From Salisapilia sapeloensis CBS 127946 (lineage: Eukaryota > Protista > Oomycota): a stretch of 64,000 bases of DNA. How positions within the stretch are numbered: position 1 is the first letter of the stretch; each line of letters starts with the position of its first letter. The notes beneath the pieces were generated by a model. It was not told where the DNA came from. It saw only the letters and a program-made list of their open reading frames with translations, and made no database searches. The position numbers were made by a program, and so were the translations under genes. This document shows, in pieces, positions 12,918 to 19,283 of the stretch. The stretch spans positions 1-64,000 of the forward strand of contig JAADVB010000071.1 in the NCBI GenBank assembly GCA_023334545.1, read 5' to 3'.

Positions 12918-15263
12918 ATGCTCTCGATTACCCAATTTCCTCGTCGATTCCCAGCGGTCAACAAGCGCCCGTTGGGCTCAAGTCTTGCACGCCGTGCCAC
13001 CCAGGCCGTCACGTGCACCTGGATGCGTCAAGAAGCCGCCTTGACTGATGGCTCATCCCACATGCCTTTTTCCACCCTTCGTAATCCTCCTAAGCAAGTG
13101 ATTGCAACGAAAGACTTGTCGACATCGCCCGTGTCTAGCATTGCTGTCAAGAATGCATGTCGCAAGAATGTTGGTTCATTGATACCAAACTTAACTTATT
13201 CCAGGTCGCGCTCGTCCACGGCGTCTCCATCCGCTGTTGCTTCCGAAGACGACACGTACCTCTATGGTGAACGTAGCGAGGACTGGTACACCACGTCCTC
13301 TAGCCCGAAAAGTAACCCAAACTTTCCTGGCATCGTCGATGGACACCTCACATCATTAAATATGCCCAATCTGGCAACCTGCTCTCGTCAGGAGATGCTA
13401 AACTACTTTGATAATACATGGGCGCTCACGGACGCGCTTTTCGCCAGTCTCCAAGGTGAAGAGGCGTTCCTCTCCGCTCCACCGCACGGTCTTCGTCATC
13501 CTCTCATCTTCTACTACGGCCATGCCACGAGCTTTTATGTGAACAAATTTCTTGTTTCTGGACTCATCGAGGAGCCTGTGAATGCCCACTACGAACATAT
13601 CTTTGAAGTTGGCGTTGACGAAATGCGGTGGGACGATATGAGCAAGAATGAAATGAACTGGCCAAAGGTTAGTGAAGTGCACGCGTATCGTAAGACCGTG
13701 TACAAATTGATTCGAGACATCATTGAGACTCATCCTGGTTTGAACGACGGACATGAGCTGATTGACGAAAACCACCCGCTGTGGGCACTTAACATGACGC
13801 TGGAGCACGACCGTATTCACCTCGAAACGTCTTCCATGCTCATGCAAGAGCACCCGCTGCACTTTGTCCGCAAGCCAGAGCTCCTTCCAGACTACCACAA
13901 GACTGCGTACCGGATGTCAGTAGCCAAGCACCCAACAGTCGGCGAAGACTACCCTGCGAATGAACTCATCCCTGTGCAAGGTGGACAAGTCAAGGTCGGA
14001 AAGCCTCGAGACTACCCGTCCTACGGATGGGACAATGAATACGGAGAGCGCACCGTTGATGCTCCCTCCTGCCACGCCACAAGAGACCTCATTTCGAACG
14101 GTCAGTTCTGGGAGTTCGTCGCTGATGGAGGCTACCTTGAGCGCTCCTACTGGAGTGAAGAAGGCTGGGGCTGGAGATGTTTCCGTAACACCAAGTGGCC
14201 GCAGTTCTGGATTGCAGATGGACCTGCGGGCAGCCACCAGTACAAGCTCCGAGCGTTGTTCGATGAGATTGAAATGCAGTGGGACTGGCCAGCACAAGTG
14301 AACTATCACGAAGCACAAGCTTTCTGTCGATGGAAGAACTTGCAGGATGGAAATACGCAAGAAAAGTTCTATCATGTGAACACGGAACCGATTCATCAAC
14401 TCATGCGCAATGGGTACGACAAGTCCGAGAATACCCAAAATGACATGAGTCTGCAGTCGTTGGAAAAGAACAAGTCTGTTGCCACACAACACCAGCGAAA
14501 TCTAAGTGTCTCCCACCTGTCATTCACACCTGTAGACTCTTTCCCAGCATCTGACAATGGGTTCCGTGACGTATTTGGTAACGCGTGGGAGTGGTGTGAA
14601 GACAGCTTCGCACCGTTGCATGGCTTCCGTGTTCACAAGTACTATGATGACTTTAGCTCCCCGTGTTTCGATGGCGAACACCAGGTGATCATGGGTGGAT
14701 CGTTCATCAGCAGTGGTGATAATGGCAGTAGCAAATTTGCTCGCTACCACTTCCGTCCACACTTTTTCCAACACGCTTCCTTCCGTCTCGTGTCACAGGA
14801 CATTGATGAGAAACACTTCATTACTTTGGCTACTACCGACGTGAATGCTCCTGAGCCTCACACCAAACCCGATCCGTTCCGTACGAGTGAACAAGTGCGT
14901 GTGGGTGTCACGGAAGATGAGCGACACAGCTACGAAACGCTCGTGGATGAAGTCCAGCGTCGCTCTGAGATGGCATTGAATGCCTTTGTACAGTCCATTG
15001 GTGATGCAGGCAATGACGAAAGTAGCTTCTTGGTTCGTGACGGCCTTGCAGGAGTGCAGCAACTGCGCGACCAGGTCGCTCCTGGTGAGTACCTCGTCGT
15101 CATCGTACCGGATGATGAAGTGTCCGAGATCGAATCCGTGCTTTCGGGTGAGTTCGACAAAGGCAAAGTGCAACGTGTTCCTGTCTTCCAGCCAGAGGAA
15201 GGTCAAGGCGGCGTGCTTTCTGCCCAGACTGCCATGGCTTGGAAAAGAAAAACCGTCGCGTAA
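12918..15263 (+). CDS. ovoA: 5-histidylcysteine sulfoxide synthase OvoA (ovothiol biosynthesis): DinB_2 + FGE-sulfatase domains with a degenerate C-terminal methyltransferase remnant
   Basis: OvoA-type signatures LRHPLIFYYGH, GVDEMRWDD, the iron motif HDRIHLETSS, YPSYGWDNEYG, GNAWEWCED, GGSFIS, RYHFRPHFFQHASFR. The N-terminal extension is rich in Arg/Ser. Confidence 0.9.
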   Translation: MLSITQFPRRFPAVNKRPLGSSLARRATQAVTCTWMRQEAALTDGSSHMPFSTLRNPPKQVIATKDLSTSPVSSIAVKNACRKNVGSLIPNLTYSRSRSSTASPSAVASEDDTYLYGERSEDWYTTSSSPKSNPNFPGIVDGHLTSLNMPNLATCSRQEMLNYFDNTWALTDALFASLQGEEAFLSAPPHGLRHPLIFYYGHATSFYVNKFLVSGLIEEPVNAHYEHIFEVGVDEMRWDDMSKNEMNWPKVSEVHAYRKTVYKLIRDIIETHPGLNDGHELIDENHPLWALNMTLEHDRIHLETSSMLMQEHPLHFVRKPELLPDYHKTAYRMSVAKHPTVGEDYPANELIPVQGGQVKVGKPRDYPSYGWDNEYGERTVDAPSCHATRDLISNGQFWEFVADGGYLERSYWSEEGWGWRCFRNTKWPQFWIADGPAGSHQYKLRALFDEIEMQWDWPAQVNYHEAQAFCRWKNLQDGNTQEKFYHVNTEPIHQLMRNGYDKSENTQNDMSLQSLEKNKSVATQHQRNLSVSHLSFTPVDSFPASDNGFRDVFGNAWEWCEDSFAPLHGFRVHKYYDDFSSPCFDGEHQVIMGGSFISSGDNGSSKFARYHFRPHFFQHASFRLVSQDIDEKHFITLATTDVNAPEPHTKPDPFRTSEQVRVGVTEDERHSYETLVDEVQRRSEMALNAFVQSIGDAGNDESSFLVRDGLAGVQQLRDQVAPGEYLVVIVPDDEVSEIESVLSGEFDKGKVQRVPVFQPEEGQGGVLSAQTAMAWKRKTVA

Positions 15264-15375
15264 AGCGTACTAACGTCCTACTGACAGACATTCTTGCTCT
15301 TTCATAACACGACCTTGCAAAACAATGATGCTTTTACTCTACTTTATCATCTTTATACTTGCCAACCACGTTCAG

Positions 15376-18300
15376 TTAAGCATCTACACTTTCTCTTCCA
15401 GCAGGACATGCAGAGCTAGCGAATGGGCAGAATGCACATTCGATGAACTGAGGCTCTGGTGCAAACTCACCTCGACGCATACGCTTGACGATATCCTCTA
15501 CCATTGTTTCCACTTCCTCAGCAAGATGAGGTTCATGCTCAATTCGATCATTTGCCTTTCCTAAGCTCTCGTCCTGCCTTCCAATAACTTCGACTGTTGC
15601 TGCATGAGGTGCTTGGCCGAATACTTTTTCGTACGCATACATATACAGCTTTAGCTGCAGTCGATCCTTACGGATGGCAGCTGCCCCTCTTGCCGTGCCG
15701 TTCATGCTTGTCTTGAATTCCTGGATAAATGCTTTGCCAGTTTTGCGATCACGATCTACGCGGTCCCATACGCCTTTCAATTGGACACCTGCTGCATCTA
15801 TGTCGACCGTAAAAGGTTCTTCCACTAGCTCCACGTGTGCATCTCGATGACGAGTACAAAAGGATAGAATATCACTCTCTCCTTGCTGCACCATCGTATC
15901 CACTTGATCTGGACCCCAGAGCAAGTAGTTATCTGTTTCCAGTGTCTTACGGAAGGTGCTAAAGGCTGCGTCAACTGCTTGATCAAAATCGGAATTTTCA
16001 AGCGAAAACATAGATGAAAACGTTGCAACACCTTCATGTACAGCTCGACCATACATCATGGCAGTGTTAGGTGGCGTCGGTAGCTTCATCACTCGACTCA
16101 GATAGTACCGATGAGGACATCGCAAGTACTCTTGTACTTGTGTAAAAGACAAATGGGACGGTTCATAGCTATCAAAGTGTCTACATCGTTGGTCCATTTC
16201 GTCCTTACTTTCAATATCCTTTGGCACGTGGATTAACTCTTGGTCTTGTAGAAAGTAATCTTGAAAGTATCGACTCACTTGCTCCTTCTTCGACTTACCA
16301 TTCGAAATATCTGCATAGGACACAACTACGCGTTTCGTTGGAAGCAAAAGTGCTTGTGCTAGTAGATCGTCACAACTGTTTAAAAGTTGCTGCCGATTCT
16401 GAATCGGCTTTGGTGCTTTCATCAAAGCCTCTGGAAGTGGTAACGTTACGCGACTTAACCGACCAGGGAACTTGTTGTCCTTCATACACGCTAGAAACAG
16501 CGTCGACGTTTTCTCTACCACCGTTAACATCGATCGCATGGATAGAGGCAACACACGAATCGTCGGATATGTCGATTTTTCCACTGATGACGAGTCGTAT
16601 AGAGGAGCTGGTACCCAAGCTGAGCGTAGTTTCATGAGGTACGGAACTACCAGCGGTGACTGATTACTTTGCACCATCCTCTCCGCAGTTTCAATTTCAC
16701 GAAGAAAGTCAGCAACAGCCACAACCTCCCGTTCTTCTTCACTGGTCGATGGGTCCAGAAGTTCTTTCGTACCACCTACACTGTCTGTGAGTAGACTAGA
16801 GATACAACATTAGAGATAGAAAGACGTACCGGTGGCATCCAAGAAGGTTTGAATGATCTCCTGAACAGACATTTGATGACACTTATCTCTTAAGTCGTCA
16901 ATTAGAGACAGAAACGCCGATGTTTTTTGTACTCCATCTTGAATCACATCTTCACCGAGTGCTAATCGTCCATCATTCGAGTACGAAGAGTACTTAATAG
17001 AAGCTCCGTTACTTTTGACAAATTTAGATAGTACGACTGACAGATCGACAGAGCTTTTGCTCTCGTGTTCCATCAGTACTGACAAGAGACTTGGTGGAAA
17101 GCTAAAGGATGGTGATCGGAGGACGTTGTATAGATAACTAGAGTCACTTGGATAACAAAGAGCGACGAGAAGAGAGTAAATCGTGTTCACACGAGGCTAT
17201 GAAAAGTAGATTTAGCATTCTCAAGACCAGAATAGAGTAATGTAAACGTACCTCATCGAAAAGGTGATTGTCACCACGAAGACCATAGCCTTCTACGTGA
17301 ATACCCTGCTGGACTAAACTTCTCGAGACTCTCCGCACGTCCGGAAAACTCGGACACATGACCACCATCGATGCGTCATCACCTTTTCCATCATCCCATA
17401 GTTCCTTTATACGCTTTACGATGCCTCTTACTTCGTCCTCTGGTGTTGCATACGCAGAATATTCTACTCTAGGTCGATGCGAACTGTTATCGTCCATCAG
17501 ATCTTGAGTGGTACGAATCTGATGCTTCTCTTGAAGTACTGAAGCAAGCCTTGTCCCATTGGATTGATCTGTTTCAGACTCCACTTCAAACGTCGTAAGC
17601 TGTTGGATAGTCTTTGCTGAAGTTATATCTGCTATCAGATCGATCATGGCAGGAGTCATGGCCTGTAGATGTTCCACGGCGATATCTGTGTACTCTGTCA
17701 TGACAGCCTTTAATAGCTCTTGCTCCTGTAATGTCTGAAGCACTACTCCATCCCATGTCGTTAGATTCTGATCATCTAGTAACGTACTAAGAGCATGATA
17801 AGCTGCAGCTAACTTTGCATCGTCCAGTCCATTGTCCGTGCTCTGCAAGTCTTTCGATTCGGACGCGAAGGAGCTATAGGCCGACGGAGAGATACCCTGC
17901 TGCTGTAGCAGCTGGAAGAATTTGACTAGTTCCTGTACAAAGCGACGCGTCTGCATCGAATCAGGAGATGTCCGGAAGCTTGGATGAAGGTCATGAAAGG
18001 CAGGTAAGGACTGCAGATTGTGAAGTATGAAGGCGCCAAGCTTGGAACTTGATACCATACGCTAAAAACAAATGAGTCGTGGAATCGATAGCGTGGTAAG
18101 CAAGAAGGAATGTACCCTATTTCGTCCACCTTCCTCCAATATCAATTGACACCACTCATGTAGTCCGAGAACGGTGTGTCCCTGTCGTTCAAGTGCATAC
18201 AGTGGCATACGATCTTCTAGAGAGCGAGAAAGCGGTGCATCCTCACTGGACGTAGCTGTCAGCACTAGCCACCGCTTCTTATCTGCCTTTATTTCGTCTG

Positions 18301-18490
18301 TCTCCAACAACTCAGGAAGCATCCGAGCATTCACTTGCTTCTGCACCGCTGAAATGGATGCTGCTTGCACCTGAACATGCTTGCAACTTTCTCTAGCATT
18401 TCCAGCATACTCTCTACTTCTCAAAACCACAGAACGCAGCACATATCCACCATGCTTGGCGCTCCATCCCTGCCGGCCGACCCGAAGCAT
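15376..18490 (-). CDS. UvrD/AddB/AdnA-like helicase-fold protein (motifs degenerate) with a C-terminal Fe-S PD-(D/E)XK RecB-family nuclease; 4 exons, about 983 aa
   Basis: Exons 18490-18116, 18061-17252, 17196-16830 and 16775-15376 are joined by 54-55-nt GTAC..AG introns and stay in frame (2952 nt). Nuclease motifs: LSFTQVQEYLRCPHRYY, YGRAVH, GVWDRVD, IQEFKT, QLKLY, CAFCPFASSAC. UvrD-like remnants: LVLTAT, LHEWCQLIL, PEDEVRGI, LYNVLRSP. Confidence 0.85.
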
Positions 18491-18596
18491 GAATAATTGC
18501 AAAATATCATGTGGAAGCGTAAATTACAAATATATTTCCAAGTACAGTTGTGGTACAGAACGATTGGCTGCCAACCACTACGCTCGCATCAAAGTA

Positions 18597-18614
18597 GCTC
18601 ACTCCATATTTTTC
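18597..18614 (+). promoter_or_regulatory. Oomycete INR+FPR core promoter element upstream of RPS13
   Basis: GCTCACTCCATATTTTTC, 16 nt before the RPS13 ATG, matches the oomycete initiator TCAYTY followed by the FPR W-T-T-Y element. Confidence 0.7.
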
Positions 18615-18630
18615 ATCCACTCGAGCAACC

Positions 18631-19283
18631 ATGGGACGCATGCACAGTCGTGGAAAGGGTATCTCCAAGTCGGCCAAGCCGTACAAGCGTACGCCTCCTT
18701 CGTGGCTGAAGGTGACGGCTGACGACGTCGAAGACCAGATCTGCAAGTTCGCCAAGAAGGGTCTTACGCCGTCGCAGATCGGTGTCATCCTCCGTGACTC
18801 GCACGGCATTGCCCAGGTCAAGAGCGTTACGGGCACCAAGATCGTCCGTCTTCTCAAGAAGAACGGTAAACTCTTTATTCTTTGCTAGCGTACTATACAC
18901 GAACTGACCAGCGTTATGTCTGTTTATCCACTTGGATTATCCCCACCCCACTCGATTGCATTGTGTTCATGCTCGGTATTACCTGGACGCACGATAATTT
19001 CTAAAAATTATTCGTTTGACGTGGGGATATGCGGGTATTATGCAACTCAAACATCTTCTCAGGCCTTGCCCCGGAAATCCCGGAAGACCTTTACATGCTC
19101 ATCAAGAAGGCTGTGGCCGTCCGCAAGCACCTTGAGCGCAACCGTCAGGACAAGGACTCTAAGTTCCGTCTGATTCTTATCGAGTCGCGTATCCACCGTC
19201 TCGGACGTTACTACCGTCAGACGCGTAAGCTTTCGCCGAACTGGAAGTACGAGTCCGCCACGGCCTCGACGCTTGTCGCCTAA
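18631..19283 (+). CDS. RPS13: 40S ribosomal protein S13 (uS15); one 197-nt intron at 18866-19062
   Basis: [20 protein letters not shown]...[21 protein letters not shown]...KKNG|[10 protein letters not shown]...[16 protein letters not shown]...[13 protein letters not shown], canonical S13. Confidence 0.98.

What the first reader, a model, noticed from the sequence alone, without database searches (positions are those of the whole stretch)
15376..18490. Helicase-dead, nuclease-intact AddB/AdnA-like enzyme with a mitochondrial-type presequence: candidate bacterial-style DNA end-processing system in an oomycete
Seen: four exons splice into one 983-aa frame that follows the UvrD/PcrA domain order, but no Walker A (GxxGxGKT) is visible. 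Walker B (ILVDEFQD) is replaced by IAVEHLQA, motif V (TVHKAKGLEF) by PLSMRSM, and motif VI (ERRLFYVAMTRA) by CDDLLAQALLLP. In contrast the nuclease keeps D..E-x-K (WDRVD, QEFKT), QxxxY (QLKLY) and all four Fe-S cysteines (RCP; CAFCPFASSAC). The N-terminus MLRVGRQGWSAKHGGYVLRSVVLRSR is Arg-rich and lacks acidic residues. Established: an inactive motor plus an Fe-S RecB-family nuclease is the design of bacterial AddB and resembles AdnA, which work with an active motor subunit in double-strand-break resection; standard eukaryotic resection uses other enzymes. Inference: an intron-bearing, domesticated bacterial gene acting in mtDNA repair or replication, alone as an exonuclease or with an unidentified UvrD motor partner encoded elsewhere.
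Basis: partly seen in the sequence, partly recalled or inferred. Interest (0 to 1): 0.82.

Follow-up and report, generated by a model that had tools for sequence, protein, structure and literature searches.

The report
Dead-helicase Fe-S nuclease of oomycetes
This oomycete gene is real, spliced and expressed, and encodes a bacterial-type DNA helicase whose motor has decayed while its iron-sulfur DNA-cutting domain stays intact; it probably trims DNA ends in mitochondria, but that role is untested.

Summary
A four-exon, 983-aa gene lies on the minus strand at 15376-18490. RNA contigs from three runs confirm all three introns. Walker A, Walker B and helicase motifs III-VI are degenerate. The C-terminal PD-(D/E)XK nuclease (Pfam 2.3e-27), its catalytic residues and its four cysteines are intact and invariant across 15 oomycetes.

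A model of a full-length ortholog matches AdnA and AddB best over the whole chain, with a UvrD/PcrA core. But the gene is not an AddB or AdnA ortholog. It belongs to one eukaryotic clade (oomycetes, ochrophyte algae, unnamed protists) nested among solitary single-chain bacterial PcrA-like/Cas4-like helicase-nucleases.

Some unnamed eukaryotes in this clade keep every helicase motif. Ochrophytes, Saprolegniales and Pythium keep only Walker A and B, as AddB keeps Walker A. This window's lineage has lost those too.

I found no active paralogous partner. Mitochondrial targeting is plausible from the Arg-rich N-termini of all orthologs, but unproven, and the RNA contigs stop 15-26 nt short of the ATG. 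I found no literature on the family.

The same stretch was noted before in this scan (s1-303230, s1-303500).

The parts
15376..18490 (-). Whole coding region: four exons, three introns, 983 aa, stop TAA at 15376-15378
   Evidence: Splice joints are confirmed by RNA contigs of X1, X2 and X3.
18116..18490 (-). Exon 1 (aa 1-125): N-terminal extension plus the remnants of strand beta-1, the P-loop and motif Ia
18380..18490 (-). Candidate mitochondrial presequence (aa 1 to about 37). It is Arg-rich, its first acidic residue is at position 27, and it holds an R-x-Y/A motif (REY/AG, aa 25-29).
   Evidence: Composition compared with orthologs and bacteria. The equivalent residues 1-41 of ortholog P0004 are disordered in the AlphaFold2 model. 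This is inference only, and the RNA contigs end at 18464-18475.
18341..18364 (-). Walker A remnant AASISAVQ (aa 43-50): no G-K-T/S
   Evidence: Alignment with intact homologs
18062..18115 (-). Intron 1, 54 nt, GT..AG
   Evidence: RNA joint 18061/18116 in three runs
17252..18061 (-). Exon 2 (aa 126-395): domains 1A/1B and the start of 2A of the UvrD-like fold
   Evidence: Family profile against PcrA.
17654..17683 (-). Walker B remnant IAVEHLQAMT (aa 252-261). The D-E of the VDEFQD motif is replaced by E-H.
17197..17251 (-). Intron 2, 55 nt, GT..AG
   Evidence: RNA joint 17196/17252
16830..17196 (-). Exon 3 (aa 396-518). With the end of exon 2 it holds the clade's most conserved block of the motor-like part, HLFDEP...YSLLVALC.PSDS..LYNVLRS.
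   Evidence: Weak addA_Gpos hit, E=0.025.
16776..16829 (-). Intron 3, 54 nt, GT..AG
   Evidence: RNA joint that skips 54 nt
15376..16775 (-). Exon 4 (aa 518-983): the end of the 2A-like domain, a linker and the nuclease domain
   Evidence: AlphaFold2 model with mean pLDDT 85.6, above 90 in the nuclease
16528..16548 (-). Motif V remnant PLSMRSM (aa 594-600)
16339..16374 (-). Motif VI remnant CDDLLAQALLLP (aa 652-663): the arginine finger is lost
15379..16122 (-). PD-(D/E)XK Fe-S nuclease domain (aa 736-983). It holds Cys737 (RCP), His764, Asp855 (WDRVD), Glu870-x-Lys872 (EFK), Gln891/Tyr895 (QLKLY) and Cys964/967/974 (CX2CX6C).
   Evidence: Pfam PF12705 E=2.3e-27. The residues are invariant in 15 oomycetes. 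Foldseek matches AdnA, ACE1/Cas4, AddB, EXO5 and Dna2.

Best explanation
The gene encodes a nuclear-encoded DNA-end nuclease that is probably imported into mitochondria. It descends from a bacterial single-chain PcrA/UvrD-type helicase fused to a Cas4/RecB-type [4Fe-4S] nuclease.

Shown:
- The gene is spliced and expressed.
- The whole chain is colinear with intact bacterial and eukaryotic helicase-nucleases.
- The ATP-binding and motor motifs (I, II, III, IV, V, VI) are destroyed.
- The nuclease catalytic residues and the four cluster cysteines are invariant.
- The motor-like region is as conserved among oomycetes as the nuclease.

Inferred:
- The protein cannot hydrolyse ATP or translocate.
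- Its UvrD-like body serves as a passive DNA-holding or strand-splitting scaffold, as in AddB, AdnA and RecC.
- This scaffold feeds a 5'-ended strand into the Fe-S nuclease, so the enzyme trims or resects 5' ends.
- The likely setting is recombination-dependent repair or replication of mitochondrial DNA.
- It acts alone or with an unrelated mitochondrial motor.
For: - Splicing and expression.
- End-to-end homology: 36% identity over 974 aa to Globisporangium P0004, and alignment to intact bacterial P0022.
- Motif decay table.
- Pfam and NCBIfam nuclease hits.
- Invariant catalytic and Cys residues, and 36-41% identity in the 2A/2B-like region against 36-43% in the nuclease.
- The family profile hits PcrA at 2.7e-24 across the whole core and the AdnA nuclease at 8e-18.
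- AlphaFold2 models reach pLDDT 85.6 and 86.9.
- Foldseek puts AdnA and AddB on top.
- VIA-align gives UvrD/Rep/PcrA Z about 25, AddB Z 23 (833 residues aligned) and AdnA Z 22.
- The eukaryotic clade is one group (SH-aLRT 100) nested in bacteria.
- Bacterial homologs are solitary genes.
- All oomycete orthologs have R/K-rich, acid-poor N-termini, unlike the bacterial ones. The N-terminal 41 residues of P0004 are disordered.
- From the literature: the AdnA Fe-S nuclease takes the 5' strand (PMC8789073), and the dead helicase of AddB is a DNA-scanning module (PMC3321194).
Against: - No biochemical or localisation data exist.
- No dedicated targeting predictor was available.
- The RNA contigs stop 15-26 nt downstream of the proposed ATG. 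A start at Met57, without a presequence, is therefore not excluded.
- The polarity of the nuclease and its substrate are taken from analogy only.
- The global superposition on AddB and AdnA is loose (rmsd 16-18 A), so the domain arrangement may differ.
- The partner search was limited to proteins that share sequence words with the queries.
Confidence: 0.5

Rival explanations
1. It is the inactive subunit of a two-protein resection machine, as AddB is to AddA or AdnA to AdnB. An active motor encoded elsewhere (a UvrD-type, PIF1-type or Twinkle-type helicase) would pull DNA through it.
For: - The best whole-chain structural matches are the partner-dependent subunits AdnA and AddB.
- The dead motor region is strongly conserved, which would fit a protein-protein interface.
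Against: - Searches with the ortholog P0004 and with the intact eukaryotic member P0032 found no second oomycete paralog with a UvrD plus PDDEXK architecture.
- The bacterial relatives are solitary genes with no adjacent paralog.
- The ancestral form of the eukaryotic clade was therefore a stand-alone enzyme.
Confidence: 0.2
2. It is a nuclear or cytosolic DNA repair or replication nuclease, a Dna2/EXO5-like helper, and the basic N-terminus is not an import signal.
For: - The RNA contigs do not reach the ATG at 18490, so the N-terminal 56 residues are not proven to be translated.
- No targeting predictor was run.
- Structurally related Fe-S nucleases (Dna2, EXO5) also act in nuclei (general knowledge).
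Against: - Every full-length oomycete ortholog starts with an R/K-rich, acid-poor stretch, often with R-x-(Y/F/L)-(A/S/C). Bacterial homologs start acidic.
- The stretch lies outside the folded core.
- Residues 38-56 align with strand beta-1 and helix alpha-1 of domain 1A, which a start at Met57 would delete.
Confidence: 0.22
3. It is a decaying gene or a non-catalytic relic: a pseudoenzyme kept only as a DNA binder, or on its way to being lost.
For: - Helicase motifs are lost step by step along the stramenopile lineage.
- The branch leading to this window's protein is long, at 1.18 changes per site.
Against: - The reading frame is intact over 983 codons across four exons and is correctly spliced at word depths of 33-381.
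- Orthologs exist in all sampled oomycete orders.
- All nuclease catalytic and cluster residues are invariant.
Confidence: 0.05

Closest known systems
AddB (RexB), the inactive-helicase and nuclease subunit of bacterial AddAB
   Same: It shares the four-subdomain UvrD-like body without working helicase motifs, followed by a RecB-family nuclease stapled by one N-terminal and three C-terminal cysteines. VIA-align gives Z 23 with 833 residues aligned, and Foldseek gives E=1.4e-23. Saprolegniales, Pythium and ochrophyte orthologs keep only Walker A and B, much as AddB keeps only Walker A (PMC3321194).
   Different: There is no sequence membership: 30.9 bits against the 486.5 cutoff, and profile E=1e-5 only. 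No AddA partner was found. This window's protein has lost Walker A as well. Its origin is separate, from a single-chain helicase-nuclease.
AdnA of mycobacterial AdnAB
   Same: It is the top Foldseek match for both models (7sjr_A, E=1.6e-9 and 4.2e-24). Among solved structures it is also the best sequence match for the nuclease (E=8e-18). It has a motor-like domain plus an Fe-S nuclease that takes the 5' strand (PMC8789073).
   Different: AdnA keeps Walker A and B and binds AMPPNP (PMC8789073, PMC3321194). It works as an obligate heterodimer with AdnB, which is encoded next to it. Neither holds here.
Bacterial single-chain PcrA-like helicase fused to a Cas4-like Fe-S nuclease (unnamed family, about 950-1000 aa; examples are P0060 of Candidatus Limnocylindria and P0022 of WOR-3)
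   Same: These are true homologs. They are colinear over the full length. The eukaryotic clade nests among them. The nuclease motifs and the FPGR..R..LP block are the same. An AlphaFold DB bacterial model superposes globally (TM 0.66-0.71, rmsd 7 A).
   Different: The bacterial proteins have all helicase motifs intact (pcrA model 440-500 bits) and no N-terminal extension. As far as I could find, the family itself is uncharacterised.
RecC of RecBCD
   Same: It has a dead SF1 helicase fold with no NTP site at all, used as a DNA-scanning scaffold. It is a structural match.
   Different: The nuclease-like domain of RecC is also dead, whereas here the nuclease is intact. There is no sequence relation beyond the fold.
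EXO5, DNA2 and MGME1: eukaryotic PD-(D/E)XK nucleases that process 5' ends, partly in mitochondria
   Same: The nuclease fold is the same, and EXO5 and DNA2 share the same four-cysteine cluster arrangement (Foldseek E=4e-6 to 1e-5; Pfam Dna2 E=1.3e-6). The proposed role is similar.
   Different: EXO5 and MGME1 have no UvrD-like body. DNA2 carries an SF1B helicase C-terminal to the nuclease. They are different families.

Membership tests
PD-(D/E)XK nuclease superfamily, PDDEXK_1 (PF12705) | Score above the curated Pfam cutoff over the whole domain | tested here: met
   97 bits against a cutoff of 22, profile positions 1-244 of 247
PD-(D/E)XK nuclease superfamily, PDDEXK_1 (PF12705) | Catalytic D ... 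(D/E)xK plus the QxxxY motif | tested here: met
   D855, E870-F-K872 and Q891...Y895 are invariant in 15 oomycetes
Fe-S 'iron staple' nucleases (AddB/Cas4/Dna2/EXO5 type) | One Cys before the nuclease core plus a CX2CX5-6C after it | tested here: met
   C737 plus C964/C967/C974 are invariant. Cluster binding itself cannot be tested with these tools.
Cas4 (TIGR00372) | Score above the curated equivalog cutoff | tested here: not met
   57.5 bits against a cutoff of 65. The protein also carries a 720-aa helicase-like body that Cas4 lacks.
AddB (TIGR02773 / TIGR02786) | Score above the curated equivalog cutoff | tested here: not met
   addB_alphas 30.9 bits against 486.5. addB_Gpos was not reported.
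AddB (TIGR02773 / TIGR02786) | A UvrD-like fold that lacks helicase motifs but keeps a Walker A NTP site | tested here: not met
   The fold is present, but Walker A is gone in this protein (AASISAVQ). It is kept in Saprolegniales, Pythium and ochrophyte orthologs.
AddB (TIGR02773 / TIGR02786) | Works with an AddA partner that is an active helicase-nuclease | tested here: inconclusive
   No such paralog was found in oomycete proteins, but the searches are pre-filtered on shared words and this genome was not scanned whole.
AdnA (AdnAB) | A motor-like domain that keeps Walker A and B and binds nucleotide | tested here: not met
   Both motifs are degenerate. The AdnA features are taken from PMC8789073 and PMC3321194.
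AdnA (AdnAB) | Encoded beside, and forms a heterodimer with, a paralogous active subunit | tested here: not met
   The neighbours are an OvoA-like gene and RPS13. The bacterial relatives are also solitary.
UvrD/PcrA/Rep SF1A helicases (PF00580 + PF13361) | Four-subdomain 1A/1B/2A/2B fold | tested here: met
   Ortholog model against UvrD, Rep and PcrA gives Z 24-26 over residues 37-717. The family profile hits PcrA at E=2.7e-24.
UvrD/PcrA/Rep SF1A helicases (PF00580 + PF13361) | Conserved motifs I, Ia, II, III, IV, V and VI for ATP hydrolysis and translocation | tested here: not met
   All are degenerate. There is no Pfam UvrD hit for this protein's exon pieces.
Single-chain PcrA-like/Cas4-like helicase-nuclease clade (bacteria plus one eukaryotic subclade) | Full-length colinearity and phylogenetic nesting | tested here: met
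   BLAST is colinear over about 900 aa. The eukaryotic group forms one branch (SH-aLRT 100) inside the bacterial rows.
Mitochondrial matrix proteins with a cleavable presequence | A basic, acid-poor, amphipathic N-terminal extension that is cleaved on import | tested here: inconclusive
   The composition and the R-x-Y/A motif fit, and they recur in the orthologs. There is no predictor and no experiment, and the 5' end of the mRNA is unresolved.

The most novel reading that the evidence does not exclude
Stramenopiles have independently re-run the evolution that produced AddB and RecC in bacteria. A stand-alone helicase-nuclease, inherited once by eukaryotes, was turned step by step into a motor-less DNA-scanning Fe-S nuclease. 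The steps run from an intact motor, to Walker A and B only, to no NTP site at all. This protein would be the missing 5'-end resection factor that feeds bacterial-type RecA in mitochondrial DNA recombination. It might read specific mtDNA sequences through its dead motor, as AddB reads Chi.
Probability: 0.25. Interest if true: 0.8.

Novelty: new variant of a known kind. Interest (0 to 1): 0.58.

Why it matters
The enzymes that resect DNA ends for recombination in organelles are still unidentified, at least in plant mitochondria (PMC6981420). This family is an unstudied, conserved candidate for that step in oomycetes and related algae.

It also offers a natural series of motor decay in one protein family: all motifs intact, then Walker A and B only, then nothing. 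That series could show how dead helicases such as AddB and RecC arise and what they are kept for.

Animals, plants and fungi did not appear among the relatives recovered here, so the family could be of practical interest in oomycete biology. That absence was not tested systematically.

Tried and rejected
- A single-sequence search of the nuclease half against PDB sequences found nothing. Only the family profile did.
- AddB, AdnA and Cas4 membership were tested and not met.
- An upstream exon that supplies a Walker A is rejected. The RNA contigs show no further joint. The region towards the divergent RPS13 gene is about 130 nt long. The Walker A position aligns inside exon 1.
- Searches for a partner or paralog with P0004 and P0032 returned only orthologs and bacteria.
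- The donor could not be named. The alignment-based scan of bacterial genomes failed for lack of a conserved stretch. A scan with P0060 showed only that the nearest sampled bacterial row is from Candidatus Limnocylindria (Chloroflexota). One row is too thin to name a donor, and there is no alphaproteobacterial signal.
- AlphaFold DB clusters gave no organism names.
- The 13 differences in a 95%-identical transcript of a related organism split 7 synonymous to 6 non-synonymous. They lie in the poorly conserved linker and say little about selection.
- Five literature searches, one of them on ortholog locus tags, found no description of the family.
- The full-length window protein could not be folded, because a spliced sequence has no reference. 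I folded exon 4 and the ortholog P0004 instead.
Full report
**Observation**

The minus strand between 15376 and 18490 carries four open pieces. Short GT..AG introns of 54, 55 and 54 nt join them into a 2952-nt, 983-codon frame with a single terminal stop. Contigs from three RNA runs of the same organism (X1, X2, X3) lie on the stretch without a mismatch. They skip exactly 18062-18115, 17197-17251 and 16776-16829.

The contigs end at 18472, 18464 and 18475. That is 15-26 nt inside the coding region, so the ATG at 18490 is not itself covered. A 375-nt contig from a second organism (X5) is 95% identical to 16049-16423.

**Domains**

Only the last exon hits curated families: PDDEXK_1 at E=2.3e-27, Dna2 at 1.3e-6, cas4 at 57.5 bits (cutoff 65) and addB_alphas at 30.9 bits (cutoff 486.5). 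The three upstream exons hit no UvrD model. Exon 3 gives only a faint AddA match (E=0.025).

The whole protein nevertheless aligns end to end with homologs. Identity is 36% over 974 residues to Globisporangium splendens P0004, 33% to Pythium oligandrum P0006, 27% to Saprolegniales proteins, and 21% over 933 residues to an intact bacterial helicase-nuclease, P0022.

A profile of 18 eukaryotic members hits several solved structures:
- PcrA across profile positions 39-711, at E=2.7e-24.
- The AdnA nuclease domain, at 8e-18.
- The AdnB motor, at 1e-12.
- AddA and AddB, only at 1e-5 to 1e-6.

**Motifs**

In a 29-sequence alignment anchored on intact bacterial proteins, this window's protein reads as follows:
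- AASISAVQ in place of AGAGTGKT (motif I).
- IAVEHLQAMT in place of LVDEFQDTN (motif II).
- Nothing recognisable at motifs III and IV.
- PLSMRSM at motif V.
- CDDLLAQALLLP at motif VI.

The phosphate-binding lysine, the Mg-binding aspartate, the catalytic glutamate and both arginine fingers are gone, so ATP hydrolysis is not expected. This is inferred from sequence.

In contrast, C737, H764, D855, E870, K872, Q891, Y895, C964, C967 and C974 are among 64 positions invariant in all 15 oomycete sequences. The dead 2A/2B-like region is 36-41% identical to Peronosporales and Pythiales orthologs. That is as conserved as the nuclease, at 36-43%. The motor-like body is therefore under constraint and is not drifting.

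**Structure**

AlphaFold2 on exon 4 of the window, with a 90-sequence alignment, gave mean pLDDT 85.6, and above 90 through the nuclease. Its best Foldseek matches in the PDB are AdnA (E=1.6e-9), the Cas4-family ACE1, AddB, RecC, Cas4, EXO5 and Dna2.

The spliced window protein has no reference, so I folded the full-length ortholog P0004 instead. It gave pLDDT 86.9 and pTM 0.87, with residues 1-41 disordered.

Foldseek ranks AdnA (4.2e-24) and AddB (1.4e-23) first over more than 1000 columns. VIA-align gives UvrD, Rep and PcrA Z 24-26 for residues 37-717. It gives AddB Z 23 with 833 aligned residues and AdnA Z 22. The global rmsd to AddB and AdnA is 16-18 A. A bacterial single-chain homolog in AlphaFold DB superposes much better, at TM 0.66-0.71 and rmsd 7 A.

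**Relatives and history**

Orthologs occur in every sampled oomycete order: Globisporangium, Pythium, Phytophthora, Nothophytophthora, Peronospora, Hyaloperonospora, Plasmopara, Peronosclerospora, Lagenidium, Aphanomyces, Saprolegnia, Achlya and Thraustotheca. All are annotated as hypothetical or by domain name only.

More distant members come from the ochrophyte algae Choristocarpus, Hapterophycus, Chrysoparadoxa and Tribonema. Others lie on unnamed metagenome or SRA contigs whose neighbours are eukaryotic genes: FAP206 and TIG/TRP next to P0032, 14-3-3 and PIG-V next to P0047, UFD1 next to P0330, and importin-5 next to P0099.

All 27 such rows form one group, in FastTree and in IQ-TREE (LG+C20 PMSF, SH-aLRT 100). 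The group is nested among bacterial rows. Its nearest bacterial row, P0060, is 100% identical to a Candidatus Limnocylindria (Chloroflexota) MAG. One row is too little to name a donor.

Within the clade the motor decays stepwise:
- P0032, P0047, P0083 and P0045 keep every motif.
- Ochrophytes, Saprolegniales and Pythium sensu stricto keep only Walker A and a VDD/VDE Walker B. This is close to the state described for AddB, which keeps Walker A only (PMC3321194).
- Globisporangium, the Phytophthora/downy-mildew group and this window have lost Walker A.
- This window (VEH) and Plasmopara (IEN) have lost Walker B as well.

The bacterial relatives score 370-500 bits on the PcrA model but reach no curated equivalog cutoff. 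In the four contexts I examined they are solitary genes without an adjacent paralog.

The protein therefore resembles AddB and AdnA by parallel decay, not by descent from them.

**Partner**

Searches of 5.8 billion proteins with P0004 and with the intact eukaryotic P0032 returned orthologs and bacteria only. They found no second oomycete protein with a UvrD plus PDDEXK architecture. This is negative evidence from word-filtered searches. It does not exclude an unrelated motor.

**Location**

All full-length oomycete orthologs begin with 4-8 Arg/Lys and 0-2 acidic residues in the first 30 positions. Many carry R-x-(Y/F/L)-(A/S/C), for example RLY/AT, RLF/CS, and REY/AG in this window. Bacterial homologs begin acidic. 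The extension lies outside the folded core.

Residues 38-56 of this protein align with strand beta-1 and helix alpha-1 of domain 1A. This argues that translation starts at the ATG at 18490 rather than at Met57.

All this fits a mitochondrial presequence, but it remains an inference. An earlier unchecked note of this scan reports a bacterial-type RecA with a presequence in the same genome (s1-308340). If true, it would be the natural consumer of resected ends. I did not test it.

**Mechanism proposed**

The protein would be an ATP-independent nuclease. Its UvrD-like body holds a DNA end or fork and steers the 5'-ended strand into the Fe-S nuclease. The AdnA and AddB nuclease domains work this way (PMC8789073, PMC3321194). 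The likely setting is mtDNA recombination-dependent repair or replication.

The steps shown are expression, homology, motif loss and nuclease conservation. The steps inferred are lack of ATPase, strand polarity, location and biological role.

**Known or new**

Five full-text searches, including one on ortholog locus tags, found no description of the family. Resection factors of organellar recombination are stated to be unidentified in plants (PMC6981420).

I rate this a new variant of a known kind: a eukaryotic, partner-less, motor-dead member of the UvrD-nuclease fusions. Its interest is moderate to high for specialists in organelle genome maintenance and in helicase evolution.

Noticed in passing
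window 15200-15375 and 12918-15263: RNA contig X1 (5347 nt) runs from this gene straight into the convergent OvoA-like gene. The 3' ends of the two transcripts therefore abut or overlap within about 110 nt.
   Followed up: no
window 18464-18631: The RPS13 gene (ATG at 18631, plus strand) is divergent. Its RNA contigs begin at 18609-18621 and this gene's contigs end at 18464-18475. The two genes thus share a promoter region of at most about 135-145 nt.
   Followed up: partly
L001:8001-11537 (protein P0032): An unnamed flagellate eukaryote, on a metagenome contig with FAP206 and TIG/TRP neighbours, carries a member of the same clade. This member is intronless, 1178 aa long and has every helicase motif intact. 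It is a natural active counterpart for comparison.
   Followed up: partly
protein P0174 (Lagenidium giganteum, 1444 aa): This gene model fuses the ortholog with a polyprenyl synthase domain (PF00348). This suggests conserved synteny or a mis-fused model.
   Followed up: no
window 16049-16423: Run X5 of a second organism holds a contig 95% identical to this stretch. Of the 13 listed differences, 7 are synonymous and 6 are not. All lie in the poorly conserved linker before the nuclease.
   Followed up: partly
L019:3001-5955, L004, L005, L006: The bacterial single-chain PcrA-like/Cas4-like helicase-nucleases reach no curated NCBIfam equivalog and stand alone in their neighbourhoods. They come from Limnocylindria, WOR-3, Patescibacteria and other groups. 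They appear to be an uncharacterised family in their own right.
   Followed up: partly
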